64,000 nt of DNA from Octopus sinensis (Eukaryota): the NCBI RefSeq assembly GCF_006345805.1, contig NC_042997.1, forward strand, positions 70,742,001-70,806,000, in the 5' to 3' direction. Position 1 is the stretch's first letter; every line of letters begins with the position of its first letter. The notes under the pieces are model-generated. The model ran no database searches. It had not been told where the DNA came from and saw nothing but the letters and a program-made list of their open reading frames with translations. This document shows, piece by piece, positions 3,521-42,682 of this stretch. A program made the translations under genes and the position numbers.

Positions 3521-5310
<1,790 letters not shown>

Positions 5311-5433: not shown

Positions 5434-5476
<43 letters not shown>

Positions 5477-5479
5477 CAC

Positions 5480-5576
<97 letters not shown>

Positions 5577-5577
5577 G
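5311..5577. repeat. Compound triplet microsatellite (TTG)(TTC)(TTA)(TCA)(TTA)
   Basis: Directly visible. Confidence 0.95.
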
Positions 5578-5917
5578 GAGGTGACGGAACTCTCAAAATA
5601 CAAAGATCTGGAAACTCGAATTTGGAGTTTAAAAACAGAAACGATCCCTATAATGATAGGTGCATTAGGTATTATTAAAAGACATACAGACAAGTACATA
5701 ATCAAAACACCAAGGCATGCAAATATATATAACATACTGTAATTATATCTATAACACACAGAAAACAATTATAAAAGCACTGCACACATCCTACATAAAG
5801 CACTTTCAATACAGTGAAAATAATAACACCAATGCAAACCACAGCACATACCCAAGGCGCACAGAGCTGCGCTCGGTAGTGCAGTGAAAGCGTGTAATGA
5901 AAATAATGACTACTGAA

Positions 5918-5918
<1 letters not shown>
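5578..5918 (+). mobile_element. Older diverged Dong family-A-like 3' fragment followed by (TAC)n
   Basis: CTCAAAATACAAAGATCTGGAAA..CCCAAGGCGCACAGAGCTGCGCTCGGTAGTG..ACTACTGAA matches the family A 3' end, with indels. Confidence 0.8.
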
Positions 5919-5986
<68 letters not shown>

Positions 5987-12972: not shown

Positions 12973-13052
<80 letters not shown>

Positions 13053-13057
<5 letters not shown>

Positions 13058-13654
13058 TAGTTTTATTTTTAATAGCGTGCTTTCACTTCACTACCGAGCG
13101 CAGCTCTGTGTGCCTTATATGTGCTGTGATTTGTTGTGATGCTCTGATGGTTATTGTATGGAAAGTGTTCTGCGTAGGATGTGTGCAGTGACTAGTAGTG
13201 CAATTTTCTGTATGTTATATGTATTTGTAAGTCCTGGTGTTTTTGTTATGTATTTGTCTGAATATTTTTTTATCATGCCTAATGCACCTACTATGATAGG
13301 AATTATTTCTGTTTTTAGATTCCACATTCTGGTTACCTCTATTTCCAGGTCTTTGTATTTTGAAAGTTTTCCCATTTCTTTTAGAAACACGTTGTCATCT
13401 GCCGGTATTGATACATCAATTAGAAAGCATTTTTTTTCTTCATGATCTCTGACAACTATATCTGGTCTGTTGGCCTTAATTTCTCTATCTGTGTGTATCG
13501 GCATATCCTAGAGTATGGTTGCTTTCTCGTTTTCTGTGACCTTTTCTGGTGTGTGCCTATACCATCTTTTTTCTGTTGTTATTCGATAATGTTGGCATAG
13601 CTTCCAGTGTATGTAGCTTCCAACTCTGTCATGTCTGTGAATATATTCCTTCTT
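13053..13654 (-). mobile_element. Dong family A 3' fragment
   Basis: RLE ORF 13151-13504. (TAA)n on both sides. Confidence 0.9.
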
Positions 13655-13656
13655 AA

Positions 13657-14400
<744 letters not shown>

Positions 14401-14402
14401 AA

Positions 14403-14433
<31 letters not shown>

Positions 14434-14446
14434 TATTATATTATTA

Positions 14447-14483
<37 letters not shown>

Positions 14484-14487
<4 letters not shown>

Positions 14488-15095
14488 GTTTGACTTTTGC
14501 TTTACATTTGTATAAGTTGGCTCCAAGTCTCACCCAAGGACCTCAAGAGACAGCAAGTTGGAAGTTCATGTTGGTATTATGCCTAGGGTGCCATACATTT
14601 GGTTTCGTACTTAGTGTTGTACTAGTGAATGTTTAAGAAACCATAAGGAAATTATGTTTGTTTTATACTTGAGATTACATAGAAAGTATTTTGCGTAGGA
14701 CATGAGCAGTTCCCATGAGCACTGTCTCTTGCATTTCTGCCATTTTGGTGTTTCCTGGTATCTGAGCTATGTAGTAAGCAGCCCCTTTTGCTATCATTCC
14801 CAGGGCACCTATGGCAACAGGCATTGTTTTAGTCTTCAGGTTCCACATTTTGCTGATTTCTATTTCAAGATCTTTATATTTGCTCAGTTTCTGGTAGGTC
14901 TTGACAGATACGTTTATATCGATTGGGACAGTCATATCAATGAGGAGGCATGTTCTTTGTCTAAAGTCTTTCAATATGATGTCTTACCTATACGCATCTA
15001 TCTTTCTGTCAGTTTGAATGGTGAAGTTCCAGAAGAGTGAGACGTGATCATTTTCAAGCACTGGAGGCGGTTTGTGTTCCCACCAGTTTTTATCA
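14484..15095 (-). mobile_element. Dong family C 3' fragment
   Basis: ORF 14675-14974 CLLIDMTVPIDINVSVKTYQKLSKYKDLEIE. The 3' UTR ends AAAGTCAAACAT followed by (TAA)n. Confidence 0.85.
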
Positions 15096-23532: not shown

Positions 23533-24449
23533 GCAAAAGGTCAGGCTTGTGTAGGATGACGGATTGCAAAAAAAATGCACTGTACAAGAAATTGAAAACG
23601 GATGAAACTGATAATAGGTGGGTAAAGAAAAGAATGCATGGTCAATTTCATAGGGATGTTGAAGACAGAGGAAAATGACGGCTGTGGATGACTAAAAGTG
23701 ATTTAAGACCGGAAACGGAGGTTCTAATCTGTGCTGCCCAAGAGCAAGCACTAAGAACAAACTACCTAAAATACAGAATAGAAAACACATCAGAAAGTGA
23801 TAAGTGCAGAATCTGTGGACAAAACAGTGATACCGTATGGTATATTATCAACCAATGCACGCCACTAGCCCAGAAGGAATATAAGAGACGCCACGAAAAT
23901 ATAGCCAGGCTTGTCCGTTGGGCATTTTGCAATAAGTAAGGATTTGACAGAGCACACAATTGGTACGACCACAAACCTGAAGGCGTCGTCGAAAATAGAA
24001 ATGCAAAGATCTTATCGTATTTTATGATTCGGTGTGGCTATGAGATTGAGAATAGGAAACCGGACATACACTTAATTGAGAAAGAAAACAAGCTATGTTG
24101 GATCATAGACATAGCATGCCCAGCTGACAACAAGGTATGTAATAAGGAAGAAAAGTCGAGAGATATGACAGGTTAGATTGGGGAGTTAAGCAGTTGTGGC
24201 CGATGAAAAAGGTAGCTGTAGTACCAATAATTGCCGGAGCCCTGAGAACAGGGAGCAAAATCTCGAGAAGTACGTGGAACAAATAGGGGCTGCAATAAGG
24301 GTGGAACACTTGCAGAAAACAGCACTGCTTGGAACCGCTCGAATACTCCGGAAGGTTCTCGACAAATAGTGGGTGTTACCTTAGTTCACTGGTAGTGAAA
24401 AGATGGCACTGTAGTACATCTTCAACGTTATAAGCTGCGCAAAGTCAAC
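23533..24449 (+). mobile_element. R4/Dong-type RLE LINE, family B, 5'-truncated
   Basis: RMHGQFHRD, LRPETEVLICAAQEQALRTNY, CRICG and KPDIHLIEKENKLCWIIDIACP. The 3' UTR ends AAAGTCAAC followed by (AAT)n. Confidence 0.88.
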
Positions 24450-24466
24450 AATAATAATAATAATAA

Positions 24467-25103
24467 ATACCCTGATGCTGTACCAGGCAGTGGCTCTCGT
24501 GTCTTCTGATCTTAACTGATTGGAAGAGTTATTATGTACATTGTTTTCTCTTGGTATAAAAGAAGGGCTGCAGCAAATATTCTGCTCAATACCAAAGATT
24601 TGTTTGTCGGTTGCTTGACCTTAACCAGTTGAACATGTCCCTTAATGGCTGATGAGAGGTGCATGTGTAATCATGAGCAGAAGTAGTGTGAGAGCATCGT
24701 AGCCATGTGTTGAGGGTTATTCTTTGTAGTTTGGATAATTCAGCTCTAGAAACATGGGTGTTTCGGTCAACATCCTTAAACAAACCTTATTCGGCGATCT
24801 TTTGAGCGAGATGGACTACTCGACCTGAAGAAAATTCTAACTGGGGTCCACCTGTAAGGTCATGCGGTGTTGATCTGGATATGGTCACCATGTTGCGCGC
24901 ATATGGCTGTGATGCATGTGTCTAGGCTCCACTTGCAAGTTCATGCACTGTTTATCTTGATATGAGATCACCATATTCCACATATATGGTTCTGATGCAT
25001 TTCGCTGTTGTACCCTTATCAAACAGGTAGACATGATGGATATATTGGGGTTCGTGTATGTGCACCCCAGTGTCATTTGAGGGTATGCATTCCTCTCTCA
25101 CTC
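24467..25103 (+). mobile_element. ORF-less (TAA)n-flanked non-autonomous element, with an internal ~85-bp duplication
   Basis: Starts ATACCCTGATGCTGTACCAGGCAGTGGC and ends CTCTCTCACTC(AAT)n. Same family as 38657-42117. Confidence 0.85.
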
Positions 25104-25114
25104 AATAATAATAA

Positions 25115-25512
25115 TCCTTTCTAATATAGGCACAAGACCTGAAATTCGAGGGGTATGGACCAGTTGTTTTCATCGACCCCTGTATTCAATTGGTACTTAA
25201 TTGATCAACCCCGAAGATATGAAAGGCAAAGTCGACCTCGGCGGAAGTTGAATGCAAAACTTAACCGCAGACGAAATACCTATTTCTTTACTACCCACAA
25301 GGGGCTAAACACAGAGAGGACAAACAAGGACAGACAAACGGATTAAGTCGATTATATCGACCCCATAGCGTAACTGGTACTTATTTAATCGAACCCCAAA
25401 GGAAGAAAGGCAAAGTCGACCTCGGCGGAATTTGAACTCAGAACGTAGCGGCAGACGAAATACCGCTAAGGATTTCGCCCGGCGTGCTAACGTTTCTGCC
25501 TGTTCGCCGCCT
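25115..25512 (-). mobile_element. Dimeric tRNA-derived SINE
   Basis: Head GGCGGCGAACAGGCAGAAACGTTAGC..GAGTTCAAATTCC. Central GCCGAGGTCGACTTTGCCTTTC occurs twice. Tail AGAAAGG(ATT)n. Confidence 0.85.
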
Positions 25513-25631
25513 TTAAATGCACTAATATTAGGGGTTAAAGTAAACTGGTTAAACCGAAAACATCGTCTATGATTTAACGCACACGTCTGGTCATAGTCTT
25601 TATCAATTTCAGCATTAACATAGTGAATCTT

Positions 25632-30226: not shown

Positions 30227-30298
30227 CGGACATATGGCGTACTGGTTAATAGCGCGGGCTACTAACCCCAAGATTCCGAGTTCGATTCCAAGCAGTGA

Positions 30299-30302
<4 letters not shown>
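30227..30302 (+). mobile_element. Minimal tRNA-head SINE with (TAA)n tail
   Basis: A box TGGCGTACTGG and B box GTTCGATTCC. The acceptor stem does not pair. Immediately followed by about 90 nt of (TAA)n. Confidence 0.7.
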
Positions 30303-30342
<40 letters not shown>

Positions 30343-30361
30343 GTAATAATAATAATAGTAA

Positions 30362-30392
<31 letters not shown>

Positions 30393-30393
30393 A

Positions 30394-34584: not shown

Positions 34585-35221
34585 GAGTGAGAGAGGAATG
34601 GATACCTTCAAAGTGACACTGGAGTGCACATACACGAACCCCAATATATCCATCATGTCTACCTGTTTGATAAGGGTACACCAGCGAAATACGTCAGAAC
34701 AATATATGTGGAATATGGTGATCTCATATCAAGATAAACAGTGCATGAACTTGCAAGTGGAGCCTAGGCACATGCATCACAGCCATATGCGCGCAACATG
34801 GTGACCATATCCAGATCAACACCGCATGACCTTACAGGTGGACCCCAGTTAGAATTTTCTTCAGGTCGAGTAGTCCATCTCGCTCAAAAGATCGCCGAAT
34901 AAGTTTGTTTAAGGATGTTGACCGAAACACCCATGTTTCTAGAGCTGAATTATCCAAACTACAAAGAATAACCCTCAACACATGGCTACGATGCTCTCAC
35001 ACTACTTCTGCTCATGATTACACATGCACCTCTCATCAGCCATTAAGGGACATGTTCAACTGGTTAAGGTCAAGCAACCGACAAACAAATCTTTGGTATT
35101 GAGCAGAATATTTGCTGCAGCCCTTCTTTTATACCAAGAGAAAACAATGTACATAATAACTCTTCCAATCAGTTAAGATCAGAAGACACGAGAGCCACTG
35201 CCTGGTACAGCATCAGGGTAT
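34585..35221 (-). mobile_element. ORF-less (TAA)n-flanked element (inverted homolog of 24467-25103)
   Basis: Same internal duplication. About 97% identical to 24467-25103 by eye. Confidence 0.85.
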
Positions 35222-36905: not shown

Positions 36906-37514
36906 TGGAAGGCACCTGGGCATGACAAGATCCCCAACTTCTGGTTGAAATATCTAACAGGAATGCACAAAAAGCTGGCTGAAAACTTTAACAACATACT
37001 AGCAGAGCCAGAGACAATGCCTGAATGGCTCACGAAGGGGAAAACCATCTTAATTCCCAAATCAAATGAGACAGTTAAACCAGAAAACTACAGACCAATA
37101 AACTGCCACCCTACAATGTACAAGGCATTTACTGCAGTGATATCGCAAAGGTTGAACAAGCACCTGGACGAAAATAACCTGTTTCCAGAAGAGCAGAAAG
37201 GATGCCGCAAAGGCTCATATGGCTGTAAAGATCAACTAAGGATTAATAAAGCCACTGAAGACAGCCACAGAAAGAAGAAAGGCCTCAGTATGGCCTGGAT
37301 CGACTACAAAAAGGCGTTTAATAGCATCCCCCACACATGGATCCTCGAAACACTAGCCATTAACAAAGTAGCACCAACAATTATAAAATTCATAGGGCAC
37401 TCTATGAATAAACGGCAAACAGTGCTACAGCTCCAAACAAAAGAGGGACTCATGAAAACCAAAGCCATCCCCATTAGAAGCGGAATATTCCAGGGAGACA
37501 CGCTCTCTCCACTC
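36906..37514 (+). pseudogene. Dong reverse transcriptase N-terminal fragment (lacks the YxDD motif)
   Basis: WKAPGHDKIPNFWLK, NYRPI, EEQKGCRKGSYGCKDQL, WIDYKKAFNSIPH, GIFQGDTLSPL. Confidence 0.88.
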
Positions 37515-38569
37515 GGCAAAACACGAGCAAAACAAAAAACTGTTCTCAGTATTTAAGGAAGCTGACAAATACAAACAAGAAATCATACCACCTAATAAAT
37601 ATGAAGAAGAAGAAGAAGAAGAAGATGAAGAAGAAACAACAAAAGCTATAAAACAAATGAAATCCAAACTAAAAATAAAACAGCAACGAACCATGATAAA
37701 ACGATGGCAAGAAAAGCCCTTCATGGTAAATACTGGACTAAACTAAACACAAAAGAAATAGACAAAGAAAAATCCCAGCAATGGTTGAGAGGGTCAGGAC
37801 TGAAAGCAGAGACAGAGGGATTTTTAATTGAAGCACAAGACCAAAGCCTCCCCACCAGAAATTACCAAAAACATGTAATGAAAAGAAATATAACAAGTAA
37901 CTGCAGAATATGTGGAGATGGGCAAGAAACAATAAATCATATTATCTCTGGCTGCCCAGTCCTGGCTAAGAAGGAATATATTCACAGACATGACAGAGTT
38001 GGAACCTACATACACTGGGAGCTATGCCAACATTATGGAATAACAACAGAAAAAGATGGTATAGGCACACACCAGAAAAGGTCACAGAAAACGAGAAAGC
38101 AACCATACTCTGGGATATGCCGATACACACAGATAGAGAAATTAAGGCCAACAGACCAGATATAGTTGTCAGAGATCATGAAGGAAAAAAATGCTTTCTA
38201 ATTGATATATAAATACCAGCAGATGACAACGTGTCTCTAAAAGAAATGGAGAAACTCTCAAAATACAAAGACCTGGAAATAGAGGTAACCAGAATGTGGA
38301 ATCTAAAAACAGAAACAATTCCTATCATAGTAGGTGCATTAGGCATGATAAAAAAATATTCAGACAAATACATAACAAAAACACCAGGACTTACAAACAC
38401 ATATAACATACAGAAAATTGAACTACTAGGCACTGCACACATCCTACGCAGAACACTTTCCATACAATAACCATCAGAGCATCACAACAAATCACAGCAC
38501 ATACCCAAGGCACACAGAGCTGCGCCCGGTAGTGAAGTGAAAGCACACTATAAAAATAAAACTACTGAA
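36906..38569 (+). mobile_element. Dong family A, 5'-truncated with an internal deletion
   Basis: RT motifs from KAPGHD to QGDTLSPL join directly at 37514 to the pre-knuckle region. Knuckle, RLE and 3' UTR follow, then (TAA)n. Confidence 0.9.
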
Positions 38570-38606
38570 TAATAATAATAATAATAATATAATAATAATA
38601 ATAATA

Positions 38607-38643
<37 letters not shown>

Positions 38644-38656
38644 TATTATTATTATT

Positions 38657-39667
38657 GATTGAGAGAGTAGTGCATGCCATGAGAGTGAAACTGGAGTAAA
38701 ATATACGAAGCCCAGTATAACCATCATGACTACCCGTCTGATAGGAGTACACTAGGCACATGCACTACAACCATGTGCGCGCGACATGGTGATCTCATAT
38801 CAAGATAAACAGTACATGACCTTGCAGGTGGGGCTCAGTTAGAATATTCTTCTGGTCGAGTAACCCCAAAGGTCCCTGAACATGGGTTGTTTAAGGATGT
38901 TGAACGAAACATCCATGTTTCCAGAGGTGAATTATTCAAACCCCAAAGAATCCCTCTCAACACATGGCAATGATGCTTCCCCACTACTTCTGCTCGTGAT
39001 CAGAGATGCACATATCGGCAGTCACTAAGGGACATGGTCAACTGGTTAAGGCCAAACAACTGACAATCAAATCTTTGGAATTGAGCAGAATATTTGCTGT
39101 AGTCCATCGTTTATACCAAGACAAATCAATGCACATGAAAACACTTCCATTCAATTAAGATCAGAAGCCACGAGTGCCACTGCCTGGTACTGCATCAGGG
39201 TATTAGCCACTGCCTGGTACTACATCAAAGCATTTCGCACAGTCTGGTACTGCATCGGGGCATTAGCCACATCCTGGTACTGCATTAGGGCATTAGCCAC
39301 TGCCTGGTACTGCATCAGAGCATTATTATTATTATTATTATTATTGAGTGACCGAGCAGAGCATGCCATCAAAGTGACACTGGGGTAAAATATACGAAGC
39401 CCAATATACCCATCATGACTACCCGTCTGATAAGGGCACACCAGGCACATGCATCACAACCATATGTGCGCGGCATGGTGATCTCATATCAAGATAAACT
39501 GCACATGACCTTGCAGGTGGGGCCCAGTTAGAATTTTCTTCAGTTTGTGTAGCCCATCCCGCTCAAACGGTCCCTGAATAAGGGTTGTTTAAGGATGTTG
39601 AAAAACCCACCCATGTCTCCAGAGGTGAATTATTCAAACCCCAAAGAATCCCTTATTATTATTATTA

Positions 39668-39726
<59 letters not shown>

Positions 39727-39741
39727 ATTATATTATTATTA

Positions 39742-39776
<35 letters not shown>

Positions 39777-41108
39777 GAGTGAGAGAGCAATGCATTTGGG
39801 TAAAATATACGAAGCCCAGTATACCCGTCTGATAAGGGTACACTAGGCACATGCATCACAACCATATGTGTGCGACATGGTGATCTCATATCAAGATAAA
39901 CAGCACATGACCTTGCAGGTGGGGCCCAGTTAGAATATTCTTCTGGTCGAGTAACCCATCCCGCTCAAAAGGTCCCTGAATAAGGGTTGTTTAAGGATGT
40001 TGAACGAAACACCCATGTTTACAGAGGTGAATTATTCAAACCCCAAATAATCCCTCTCAACACATGGCAATGATGCTTCCCCACTTATTATTATTATTAT
40101 TATTGAGTGAGAGAGCAGTTCATGCCATCAAAGTGACACTGGGGTAAAATATACGAAGCCCAATATACCCATCATGACTACCGTCTGATAAAGGTACACC
40201 AGGCACATGCATCACAACCATATGTGCGCGACATGGTGATCTCATATCAAGATAAACAGCACATGACCTTGCAGGTGGGGCCCAGTTAGAATTTTCTTCA
40301 GTTTGAGTAGCCCATCCCGCTCAAACGGTCCCTGAATAAGGGTTGTTTAAGGATGTTGAAAGAACCACCCATGTTTCCAGAGGTGAACTATTCAAACCCC
40401 AAAGAATCCCTCTCAACACATGGCAATGATGCTTCCCCACTACTTCTGCTCGTGATCAGAGATGCACATATCGGCAGTCACTAAGGGACATGGTCAACTG
40501 GTTAAGGCCAAACAACTGACAATCAAATCTTTGGAATTGAGCAGAATATTTGCTGTAGTCCATCGTTTATACCAAGACAAATCAATGCACATGAAAACAC
40601 TTCCATTCAATTAAGATCAGAAGCCACGAGTGCCACTGCCTGGTACTGCATCAGGGTATTAGCCACTGCCTGGTACTACATCAAAGCATTTCGCACAGTC
40701 TGGTACTGCATCGGGGCATTAGCCACTTCCTGGTACTGCATTAGGGCATTAGCCACTGCCTGGTACTGCATCAGAGCATTATTATTATTATTATTATTAT
40801 TGAGTGACCGAGCAGAGCATGCCATCAAAGTGACACTGGGGTAAAATATACGAAGCCCAATATACCCATCATGACTACCCGTCTGATAAGGGCACACCAG
40901 GCACATGCATCACAACCATATGTGCGCGGCATGGTGATCTCATATCAAGATAAACTGCACATGACCTTGCAGGTGGGGCCCAGTTAGAATTTTCTTCAGT
41001 TTGTGTAGCCCATCCCGCTCAAACGGTCCCTGAATAAGGGTTGTTTAAGGATGTTGAAAAACCCACCCATGTCTCCAGAGGTGAATTATTCAAACCCCAA
41101 AGAATCCC

Positions 41109-41176
<68 letters not shown>

Positions 41177-41179
41177 GTT

Positions 41180-41230
<51 letters not shown>

Positions 41231-42117
41231 GAGTGAGAGAGCAATGCATTTGGGTAAAATATACGAAGCCCAGTATACCCGTCTGATAAGGGTACACTAG
41301 GCACATGCATCACAACCATATGTGTGCGACATGGTGATCTCATATCAAGATAAACAGCACATGACCTTGCAGGTGGGGCCCAGTTAGAATATTCTTCTGG
41401 TCGAGTAACCCATCCCGCTCAAAAGGTCCCTGAATAAGGGTTGTTTAAGGATGTTGAACGAAACACCCATGTTTACAGAGGTGAATTATTCATACCCCAA
41501 ATAATCCCTCTCAACACATGGCAATGATGCTTCCCCACTTATTATTATTATTATTATTATTGAGTGAGAGAGCAGTTCATGCCATCAAAGTGACACTGGG
41601 GTAAAATATACGAAGCCCAATATACCCATCATGACTACCCGTCTGATAAAGGTACACCAGGCACATGCATCACAACCATATGTGCGCGACATGGTGATCT
41701 CATATCAAGATAAACAGCATATGACCTTGCAGGTGGGGCCCAGTTAGAATTTTCTTCAGGTTGAGTAGCCCATCCCGCTCAAACGGTCCCTGAATAAGGG
41801 TTGTTTAAGGATGTTGAAAGAACCACCCATGTTTCCAGAGGTGAACTATTCAAACCCCAAAGAATCCCTCTCAACACATGGCTATGATGCTCCCCCACTA
41901 CTTCTGCTCGTGATCAGAGATGCACATATCGTCACCCACTAAGGGACATGCTCAACTGGTGAAGGTCAAACAACTGACAAGCGAATCTGTGGTATTGAGC
42001 AGAATATTTGCTGTAGCCCATCTTTTATACCAAGACAAAACAATGTACATGATAACACTTCCAATGAGTTAAGATCAGAAGCCACAAGAGCCACTGCCTG
42101 GTACTGCAACAGGGCAT
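38657..42117 (-). mobile_element. Head-to-tail array of 7 copies of the ORF-less (TAA)n-targeted element
   Basis: Copies at 38657-39323, 39346-39652, 39777-40084, 40105-40779, 40802-41108, 41231-41538 and 41562-42117. Each is separated by (TTA)n on the plus strand. Confidence 0.92.
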
Positions 42118-42118
42118 T

Positions 42119-42234
<116 letters not shown>

Positions 42235-42682
42235 TATGAGGATTGCAAAGAAAGACACAAATAATCATATTTAATAAAAATTATATTGTATAAAACTGGC
42301 CTTTATTTAACACCATGATGAACAAAAGAGAATGATGTAGATACAATCTTCATTTTGTCATCTAGTTAATAAATTATGGGACAAATAATTTCAACAATAA
42401 ATATTTCCCCTGGAATCCGTTTGAGAATTGCTGGTGCCATATTATGTGTTATAATGGCACCTATTTTGTGTGTTGGAACTGTTCCTGAGAAACTGTAATT
42501 ATTGCATTTCAAGTGAAATGTAAGAATCCCGAAATTTAGACCATTTTATGTCTGGCAGTTTGTATTTTGATTGTGAATATGAAATATATCACCATCAGTT
42601 TCGATCGACTTAATTTACCTGCATACCAACTTACCGTGTACTTGACTGGACATTCCTCAGGCAGACTCAGCGTGACACAGTT

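What the first reader, a model, noticed from the sequence alone, without database searches (positions are those of the whole stretch)
38657..42117. ORF-less ~560-bp retroelement inserted only in (TAA)n, piled into a head-to-tail array
SEEN: 9 copies of one element (7 here, plus 24467-25103 and 34585-35221). All keep the same end, CTCTCTCACTC(AAT)n. Full copies start at one fixed point, ATGCCCTG(A/T)TGCAGTACCAGGCAGTGGC. Four copies are cut short only at that other end, at two distinct positions, and the cut ends join directly to (TAA)n. There is no ORF, no TIR and no clear tRNA B box. KNOWN: an intact 3' end with variable 5' truncation is the signature of target-primed reverse transcription, and Dong/R4 elements target TAA microsatellites. 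INFERENCE: this is a non-tRNA, SINE-like passenger of a Dong/R4 RLE LINE. Each insertion regenerates (TAA)n targets, so arrays grow on themselves. Its 3' end matches none of the three Dong 3' UTRs in this window, so its autonomous partner may be a fourth family. I cannot tell whether it is already catalogued.
Basis: partly seen in the sequence, partly recalled or inferred. Interest (0 to 1): 0.8.

Follow-up and report, generated by a model that had tools for sequence, protein, structure and literature searches.

The report
Non-coding TAA-tailed retroposon array in octopus
A real but fairly ordinary 556-bp non-coding retroposon of octopus genomes sits in TAA microsatellites next to Dong-type LINEs, and its seven-copy array is four older copies expanded by one recent unequal crossover.

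Summary
There are nine copies of one ~556-bp ORF-less element. All share the 3' end CTCTCTCACTC(AAT)n. Full copies share the 5' start (A)AT(G/A)CCCTG. Four copies are cut at two 5' positions and join directly to (TAA)n.

The copies are not nine events. Copy c4 is a chimera of c1 (5' part, 0 differences) and c7 (3' part, 3 differences), and c2=c5 and c3=c6. So one recent unequal crossover turned a four-copy array into seven. The two distal copies lie inside a ~2-kb inverted segmental duplication and count as one event.

An independent solitary full-length copy with the same two ends lies in an intron of Octopus bimaculoides PP2A-B55alpha. The element is therefore a genuine dispersed octopus repeat.

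The neighbouring LINEs carry RT, a CCHC finger and an R2-like endonuclease. They are 5'-truncated, TAA-tailed and also stacked head to tail.

No tRNA, 5S, 7SL or ribozyme match, TIR or ORF was found. No LINE in the data shares the element's 3' end.

Best reading: a non-autonomous passenger of Dong/R4-type LINEs. This is a new member of a known kind, of moderate-to-low interest. The autonomous partner, the copy number and the origin of the fixed 5' end remain open.

The parts
41562..42117 (-). c7: full-length copy (556 bp) at the 5' edge of the array, with no extra 30-bp units
   Evidence: nhmmer profile positions 1-556, E 1.5e-206. The 5' end abuts (TAA)37 at 42118-42237.
41231..41539 (-). c6: 5'-truncated copy (from about consensus position 219) with two internal deletions of 13 and 16 bp
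   Evidence: It is 99.7% identical to c3.
40802..41109 (-). c5: 5'-truncated copy (from about consensus position 250)
   Evidence: It is 100% identical to c2 over 307 bp.
40105..40660 (-). c4: full-length recombinant copy, with the 5' part from c1 and the 3' part from c7
   Evidence: 0 differences to c1 in alignment columns 1-273 and 42 after. 25 differences to c7 in columns 1-237 and 3 after.
40661..40780 (-). Four extra tandem 30-bp units, each a copy of the element's first 30 nt (AATGCCCTGATGCAGTACCAGGCAGTGGCT), upstream of c4
   Evidence: TRF period 30, 5.0 copies, 80% matches. Units are listed in register.
39777..40085 (-). c3: recent duplicate of c6
39346..39653 (-). c2: recent duplicate of c5
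38657..39204 (-). c1: full-length copy with a diverged 3' half (9-bp deletion, 3' end CTCTCTCAATC)
39205..39324 (-). Four extra tandem 30-bp 5'-end units upstream of c1
38944..40440 (.). Recently duplicated ~1.45-kb block, equal to 40400-41890. Together the two blocks form the 1,456-bp higher-order period of the array.
   Evidence: 38644-40660 aligns to 40092-42118 at 96% over 2,030 bp. Binned differences show only about 3 substitutions outside TAA tracts within the block, flanked by diverged ends.
42118..42237 (-). (TAA)~37 tract upstream (in the sense direction) of c7. This is the presumed original target microsatellite.
24467..25103 (+). d1: full-length variant with an ~83-bp internal duplication, inserted after the (AAT)5 tail of Dong-like LINE B
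34585..35221 (-). d2: copy of d1 made by an inverted segmental duplication
   Evidence: 23835-25513 aligns to 35841-34175 at 96% over 1,680 bp, and the match extends to 23537/36511 at 78%. d1 and d2 are 98.7% identical.
36945..38567 (+). Dong-like LINE A: RT, zf-RVT/CCHC and RLE-like C-terminus plus 3' UTR. It ends in (AAT)25 at 38568-38642, tail-to-tail with c1.
   Evidence: Pfam RVT_1 E 1.8e-16 and zf-RVT. The C-terminal ORF of the sister copy matches R2 proteins 9nl2, 9nl3 and 9dou. Four other 5'-truncated copies are 96-98% identical.
23537..24449 (+). Dong-like LINE B 3' part: C-terminal ORF, 3' UTR and an (AAT)5 tail into which d1 is inserted

Best explanation
The element is a ~556-bp non-coding, non-autonomous retroposon of octopus genomes.

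Inferred mechanism:
- An RNA with a defined 5' end (AAUGCCCUG...) and a 3' (UAA)n tail is copied by target-primed reverse transcription.
- The enzyme is supplied in trans by a Dong/R4-type LINE carrying a restriction-like endonuclease, which nicks (TAA)n/(TTA)n DNA.
- The nicked TTA strand primes on the UAA tail.
- Early termination of reverse transcription gives 5'-truncated copies joined to TAA.
- Each insertion leaves TAA on both sides, so later insertions land head to tail.

Shown:
- The anatomy of the copies.
- A TAA context at all three independent loci.
- Two 5'-truncation events.
- The same behaviour in the neighbouring RLE LINEs.
- One recent unequal crossover between c1 and c7 that expanded a four-copy array (c7-c6-c5-c1) to seven.
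- An inverted segmental duplication that doubled the distal copy.

Inferred only: trans-mobilisation by a Dong-type enzyme, the polymerase that makes the RNA, and how its 5' end is set.
For: - Discrete ends. The same 5' and 3' ends appear in the array, in the distal copy and in a solitary copy in O. bimaculoides (L003:70547-71101, 89% identical to c7). There the flanks are gaaATAATAAT upstream and (AAT)11 downstream.
- Truncation is only at the 5' end and joins directly to (AAT)n.
- TAA-type tracts cover only 1.8-4.3% of the DNA sampled, yet 3 of 3 independent loci have TAA at the 5' junction.
- LINE A has RT, a CCHC finger and an R2-like RLE. It is 5'-truncated, (AAT)n-tailed and stacked head to tail, for example at 13052-14487.
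- d1 sits in the tail of LINE B.
- Literature: Dong-R4 is the most abundant recently active LINE group in O. vulgaris, and 893 unclassified SINE families exist there (PMC13282606).
- The crossover is shown by the chimeric difference pattern of c4.
Against: - No LINE in the window, L003 or L004 shares the element's 3' end or its 5' 30-mer. So the defining SINE-LINE 'common tail' is not shown.
- Only 3-5 independent insertions were seen in about 250 kb of octopod DNA. None was seen in 98.6 kb of Argonauta hians.
- No clean empty site was obtained.
- Target-site duplications cannot be read inside TAA tracts.
- Two junctions in the window have opposite TAA polarity: 38642/38643 is tail to tail, and 5575/5577 is head to TTA. 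Simple primer annealing does not explain every case.
- I-clade LINEs also end in (TAA)n (PMC3747384).
Confidence: 0.6

Rival explanations
1. The element is an internally deleted derivative of an unseen fourth Dong/R4 LINE, made of that LINE's 5' UTR joined to its 3' UTR. This would resemble the R2 SIDEs of Drosophila. It would inherit both the promoter or 5'-processing signal and the RT-binding 3' UTR from its parent. This is a sub-case of the best explanation rather than an opposite.
For: - A fixed 5' end and a fixed 3' end with no Pol III head.
- The length is typical for such derivatives.
- 5' tandem repeats, here 5 x 30 bp, occur in some LINE 5' UTRs (the comparison is from general knowledge).
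- A weak shared GGTAGT hexamer lies at a hairpin loop and 3' stem near the 3' end in LINE A, LINE B and the element.
Against: - No parent LINE was seen.
- No HDV-like or other ribozyme was found at E<=10.
- The hexamer match was found post hoc and is not significant.
Confidence: 0.25
2. The element is mobilised by a different TAA-tailed LINE lineage, such as an I-clade APE-type element, or by relaxed recognition of the tail alone. In that case its association with Dong-like LINEs in this window is only co-residence in TAA tracts.
For: - I elements end in (TAA)n (PMC3747384).
- At least five unrelated families in the window and in L003 end directly in (AAT)n with no common 3' motif.
Against: - All RT-coding TAA-tailed elements found in the window are RLE/R2-like.
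- No APE-type LINE with a TAA tail was seen.
Confidence: 0.12
3. The sequence is not a mobile element at all. It is a local satellite or segmental duplication that spreads only by recombination.
For: - The array has a 1,456-bp higher-order period and a clear unequal-crossover chimera.
- The distal pair arose by inverted segmental duplication.
Against: - A solitary copy with identical ends lies in an unrelated locus of another species.
- The distal copy sits about 13 kb from the array, in different flanks.
- The four ancestral array copies differ by 5-13% and have different 5' ends.
Confidence: 0.04

Closest known systems
Dong (Bombyx mori) / R4-clade RLE LINEs, including the Dong-R4 families annotated in Octopus vulgaris and O. 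bimaculoides
   Same: (TAA)n 3' tail, residence in TAA microsatellites, 5' truncation and head-to-tail stacking. The LINEs beside the element carry RT, a CCHC finger and an R2-like endonuclease (PMC9115989, PMC13282606).
   Different: The element has no ORF (longest 50 aa), is only 556 bp long and shares no sequence with the Dong-like 3' UTRs in the window.
R2 SIDEs (short internally deleted elements of Drosophila R2; recalled from general knowledge)
   Same: Non-coding passengers of an RLE LINE with a precise 5' end and a precise 3' end, inserted at the LINE's specific target.
   Different: SIDEs keep the parent's 5' HDV-like ribozyme and 3' UTR. Here no ribozyme was detected and no parent is known.
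Classical SINEs (tRNA-, 7SL- or 5S-headed, with a LINE-derived tail)
   Same: Short, non-coding and LINE-dependent by inference, with a microsatellite tail.
   Different: No tRNA, 7SL or 5S head. T4 runs occur on the sense strand of every full copy. No shared LINE tail has been shown.
Higher-order tandem repeats formed by unequal crossing-over
   Same: A 1,456-bp period, a chimeric junction copy and near-identical duplicated blocks.
   Different: The repeat units are retroposon insertions of different ages and lengths, not a homogenised satellite monomer.

Membership tests
SINE (classical) | Internal Pol III promoter head derived from tRNA, 7SL or 5S RNA | tested here: not met
   ARAGORN found 0 genes. 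Rfam gave 0 hits at gathering threshold and none of these families at E<=10. T>=4 runs occur on the sense strand, but at non-conserved positions.
SINE (classical) | 3' region shared with a partner LINE | tested here: inconclusive
   No similarity to LINE A, LINE B or family C 3' ends, or to anything else in the window, L003 or L004. A whole genome was not searchable.
SINE (classical) | Short, non-coding and dispersed in many copies | tested here: inconclusive
   The element is 556 bp and ORF-less. Three independent loci were seen in about 250 kb across two octopus genomes. The true copy number is unknown.
Dong/R4-dependent non-autonomous retroposon | 3' (TAA)n tail and insertion within (TAA)n | tested here: met
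   All copies end in (AAT)n. The 5' junctions are TAA at the array, at d1 and at L003.
Dong/R4-dependent non-autonomous retroposon | TPRT signature: intact 3' end with variable 5' truncation | tested here: met
   Two independent truncation points, at about positions 219 and 250, with none at the 3' end. The sample is small, n=2 events.
Dong/R4-dependent non-autonomous retroposon | RLE-type Dong/R4 LINEs present and active in the same genome | tested here: met
   LINE A has RVT_1, zf-RVT and an R2-like C-terminus, with five copies 96-98% identical. Literature support.
Dong/R4-dependent non-autonomous retroposon | Mobilisation by the Dong enzyme (shared RT-binding 3' UTR or an experimental assay) | not testable with these tools
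   No partner was found. No expression or retrotransposition data are available.
R2-type SIDE | 5' self-cleaving HDV-like ribozyme | tested here: not met
   cmscan at E<=10 over 40080-42140 on both strands found no ribozyme family. The 5' consensus fold shows no covariation. A structure-descriptor search was not run.
MITE / Helitron | Terminal inverted repeats, or 5'-TC ... CTRR-3' ends with a 3' hairpin | tested here: not met
   No inverted repeats. The ends are AATGCCC... and ...CACTC on the sense strand.

The most novel reading that the evidence does not exclude
Octopus Dong/R4 RLE LINEs recognise little more than a (UAA)n tail. They would then act like an 'L1 with a microsatellite tail', mobilising many unrelated RNAs in trans: this element, a tRNA-like 67-mer and the abundant octopus SINEs. 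That would make them the engine behind both the SINE load and the TAA microsatellites of octopus genomes. On this reading the element is a Pol II-derived passenger whose 30-nt 5' unit, multiplied five-fold in one lineage, is its promoter or 5'-end-defining module.
Probability: 0.15. Interest if true: 0.55.

Novelty: new member of a known kind. Interest (0 to 1): 0.3.

Why it matters
If confirmed genome-wide, the element would be a clean example of a non-tRNA passenger of a site-specific RLE LINE outside insects. It would also help explain why TAA microsatellites and head-to-tail retroposon stacks are so common in octopus genomes.

The array is a tidy case of a retroposon pile being converted into a higher-order tandem repeat by one unequal crossover.

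Practically, at least one copy has been read into an annotated protein, an O. bimaculoides PP2A-B55alpha isoform. Masking this family would therefore improve gene models.

Tried and rejected
- Exact look-ups of window ORFs in the assembly index found nothing.
- The closest LINE A relatives come from an unnamed SRA run and from GCA_024449705.1. No held paper names either.
- A concatenated pseudo-ORF query from the element found only one protein, the O. bimaculoides isoform that gave L003.
- The orthologous PP2A loci of O. vulgaris and O. sinensis could not be fetched. The gene range exceeds 100 kb and a shorter isoform is not on record. No clean empty site was therefore obtained.
- The Argonauta hians locus lacks the element, but its intron is not alignable.
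- A metagenome scan with a 26-mer gave 0 hits.
- Rfam searches found nothing relevant.
- Consensus folds of the 5' and 3' parts showed no meaningful covariation.
- Whole-element folding gave z = -1.5 for the sense strand and +0.7 for the antisense strand.
- A shared GGTAGT hexamer with the LINE 3' UTRs is too weak to count.
- The 3'-UTR-of-a-LINE reading was considered. It is disfavoured because 3-4 independent copies begin at the same nucleotide, while other internal AAT sites are never used as junctions.
- MITE, Helitron and tRNA-SINE readings were rejected.

Full report
**What is in the sequence.** The region 38643-42237 holds seven copies of one element, all with the minus strand as sense strand, separated by (AAT)n tracts. 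A profile built from the copies finds exactly these seven. It also finds the two distal copies at 24467-25103 (+) and 34585-35221 (-), and nothing else in the window.

Full copies are about 556 bp. They start at (A)AT(G/A)CCCTG(A/T)TGC(A/T)GTACCAGGCAGTGGC and end at CTCTCTCACTC(AAT)n, with small variants in c1 and in c2/c5. Two kinds of shorter copy begin at about consensus positions 250 and 219 and are joined directly to (AAT)n.

The longest ORF is 50 aa. There are no inverted repeats and no tRNA. Rfam gives no match at gathering threshold over the whole window. At E<=10 over 40080-42140 it gives no tRNA, 5S, 7SL, HDV-like, hammerhead or twister match.

**The copies are not independent.** The stretch 38644-40660 aligns to 40092-42118 at 96% over 2,030 bp, which gives a period of about 1,456 bp. 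Copies c2 and c5 are identical, and c3 and c6 differ at one base.

Copy c4 is a chimera. It has no difference from c1 over alignment columns 1-273 and 42 differences after that. It has 25 differences from c7 over columns 1-237 and only 3 after that. The block 38944-40440 differs from 40400-41890 by about three substitutions outside the TAA tracts.

This is the pattern left by one recent unequal crossover between c1 and c7. That event turned an ancestral array c7-c6-c5-c1 into c7-c6-c5-c4-c3-c2-c1. The four ancestral copies differ by 5-13% and have different 5' ends. They are therefore older and probably separate insertions, although an older DNA-level duplication of c1 and c7 cannot be excluded.

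The two distal copies are 98.7% identical and share an ~83-bp internal duplication. They lie inside an inverted segmental duplication: 23835-25513 matches 35841-34175 at 96% over 1,680 bp, and the match extends at 78% to 23537/36511. They count as one event.

The 'four truncated copies' are two truncation events. The window holds at most five insertions.

**It is a genuine dispersed repeat of octopus genomes.** A query made of the element's short pseudo-ORFs hit one annotated protein, an Octopus bimaculoides PP2A-B55alpha isoform. The gene locus (L003, GCA_001194135.2 CM046622.1) holds one solitary full-length copy at 70547-71101. It is 89% identical to c7 and has the same 5' start and 3' end. 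Its flanks are gaaATAATAAT upstream and (AAT)11 downstream, and it sits in an intron just before an exon.

The orthologous locus of Argonauta hians (L004; species named in PMC12682272) has no copy in 98.6 kb. The intron is too diverged to give a clean empty site. The O. vulgaris and O. sinensis loci could not be fetched. A metagenome scan gave nothing.

**Context.** The window holds a young LINE family, here called LINE A, with five copies 96-98% identical. The copies are 5'-truncated at different points, and each ends in ...AAAACTACTG(AAT)n. Its ORFs carry RVT_1 and zf-RVT. Its C-terminal part matches R2 retrotransposon proteins in the PDB (9nl2, 9nl3, 9dou; E 8e-5 to 4e-4) over the CCHC and endonuclease region. 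It is therefore an RLE-type, Dong/R4-like LINE.

A second family, LINE B, ends in ...CGCAAAGTCAAC(AAT)5, and the distal element copy is inserted in that tail. LINE A copies are also stacked head to tail in TAA tracts, for example at 13052-14487. Stacking is therefore a general habit of TAA-tailed elements here, not a property of this element alone.

Published work agrees with this picture. It reports a full-length Dong in the O. bimaculoides library (PMC9115989). It also reports Dong-R4 as the most abundant recently active LINE group in O. vulgaris, alongside 893 unclassified SINE families (PMC13282606).

**Mechanism.** Four lines of evidence bear on this.
- The intact 3' end with a (TAA)n tail.
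- TAA at the 5' junction at all three independent loci, although TAA-type tracts cover only 1.8-4.3% of the DNA sampled.
- The two 5' truncations.
- The identical behaviour of the neighbouring RLE LINEs.

Together they make target-primed reverse transcription by a Dong/R4-type enzyme the best explanation. This step is inferred, not shown. No LINE in the data shares the element's 3' end or its 5' 30-mer. A shared GGTAGT hexamer in a hairpin near the 3' ends of LINE A, LINE B and the element is only a weak, post hoc lead.

How the fixed 5' end arises is unknown. No ribozyme or Pol III head was found. The folds show no covariation. The sense strand folds only slightly better than shuffled controls, with z = -1.5.

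I-clade LINEs also carry TAA tails (PMC3747384), so a different driver is possible. Two junctions of opposite TAA polarity, at 38642/38643 and at 5575/5577, show that the simple annealing rule is not absolute.

**Comparison and verdict.** The element works like a non-autonomous passenger of a site-specific RLE LINE.
- It fails the defining test of a classical SINE, because it has no Pol III head.
- It fails that of an R2 SIDE, because it has no detectable ribozyme and no known parent.
- It meets the tests for a TAA-tailed, TPRT-type retroposon.

It may already sit unnamed in automated octopus repeat libraries. I could not check Repbase or Dfam.

I rate it a new member of a known kind, with interest 0.3. 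The clearest new result is that the array grew from four to seven copies by one unequal crossover rather than by retrotransposition.

Noticed in passing
window 39175-39324 and 40631-40780: The element's first 30 nt (AATGCCCTGATGCAGTACCAGGCAGTGGCT) are present as five tandem units, about 80% alike, at the 5' end of c1 and c4 only. Each unit starts with AAT. The units are much more diverged than the recent duplication, so the mini-array is old. Its origin is unexplained; it could be promoter multiplication, slippage or template switching.
   Followed up: partly
window 23537-25513 versus 36511-34175: An inverted segmental duplication of ~2 kb (96% over 1,680 bp, 78% over a further 680 bp) with an ~8.7-kb spacer. 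It carries the LINE B 3' part, the element and an octopus SINE.
   Followed up: partly
window 38568-38656: A tail-to-tail junction. The (AAT)25 tail of plus-strand LINE A runs straight into the (ATT)4 tail of minus-strand c1. Insertion by simple annealing of a TTA primer to a UAA tail does not predict this.
   Followed up: no
window 5434-5986: A 5'-truncated relative of LINE A (72% identical, 5577-5917) is joined at its 5' end to a (TTA)n tract of opposite polarity. It ends ...GACTACTGAAT followed by (ACT)22 instead of (AAT)n. The ACT microsatellite apparently arose from the ACTACT motif at the LINE's 3' end.
   Followed up: partly
window 30236-30393: A ~67-nt tRNA-like sequence (...GGTTAATAGCGCGGGCTACTAACCCCAAGATTCCGAGTTCGATTCCAAGCAGTGACCTG) is followed directly by (AAT)30. 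ARAGORN does not call it. It may be a tRNA-derived retrocopy or a SINE fragment with a TAA tail.
   Followed up: partly
window 4621-4750 and 14488-14617 (minus strand): Another TAA-tailed family, here called family C, ends ...AGCAAAAG(C/T)CAAAC(AT)(AAT)n. Each copy has a LINE A copy inserted in its tail. Its last bases resemble those of LINE B (CAAAGTCAAC).
   Followed up: no
L003 70960-71165 (O. bimaculoides CM046622.1): The annotated PP2A-B55alpha isoform P0121 reads through the last ~140 nt of the element, its (AAT)n tail (a poly-Asn run) and the end of the intron into the next exon. This is either exonisation or an annotation artefact.
   Followed up: partly
window 24868-24950 and 34738-34820: An ~83-bp imperfect internal tandem duplication within the distal copies d1 and d2. 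It is absent from all array copies and from the O. bimaculoides copy.
   Followed up: no
window 25116-25500; L003 and L004, many sites: An abundant octopod SINE-like repeat (...AAAGGCAAAGTCGACCTCGGCGGAATTTGAACTCAGAAC...) flanks the distal copy. In L003 several copies end in TAA-type tails, so TAA tails may be common to many octopus non-autonomous elements.
   Followed up: no
window 38468-38567, 24370-24449, 41562-41681: LINE A, LINE B and the element each carry the hexamer GGTAGT at the loop and 3' stem of a predicted hairpin 40-80 nt before the tail. This may be a shared RT-binding motif, or it may be chance.
   Followed up: partly
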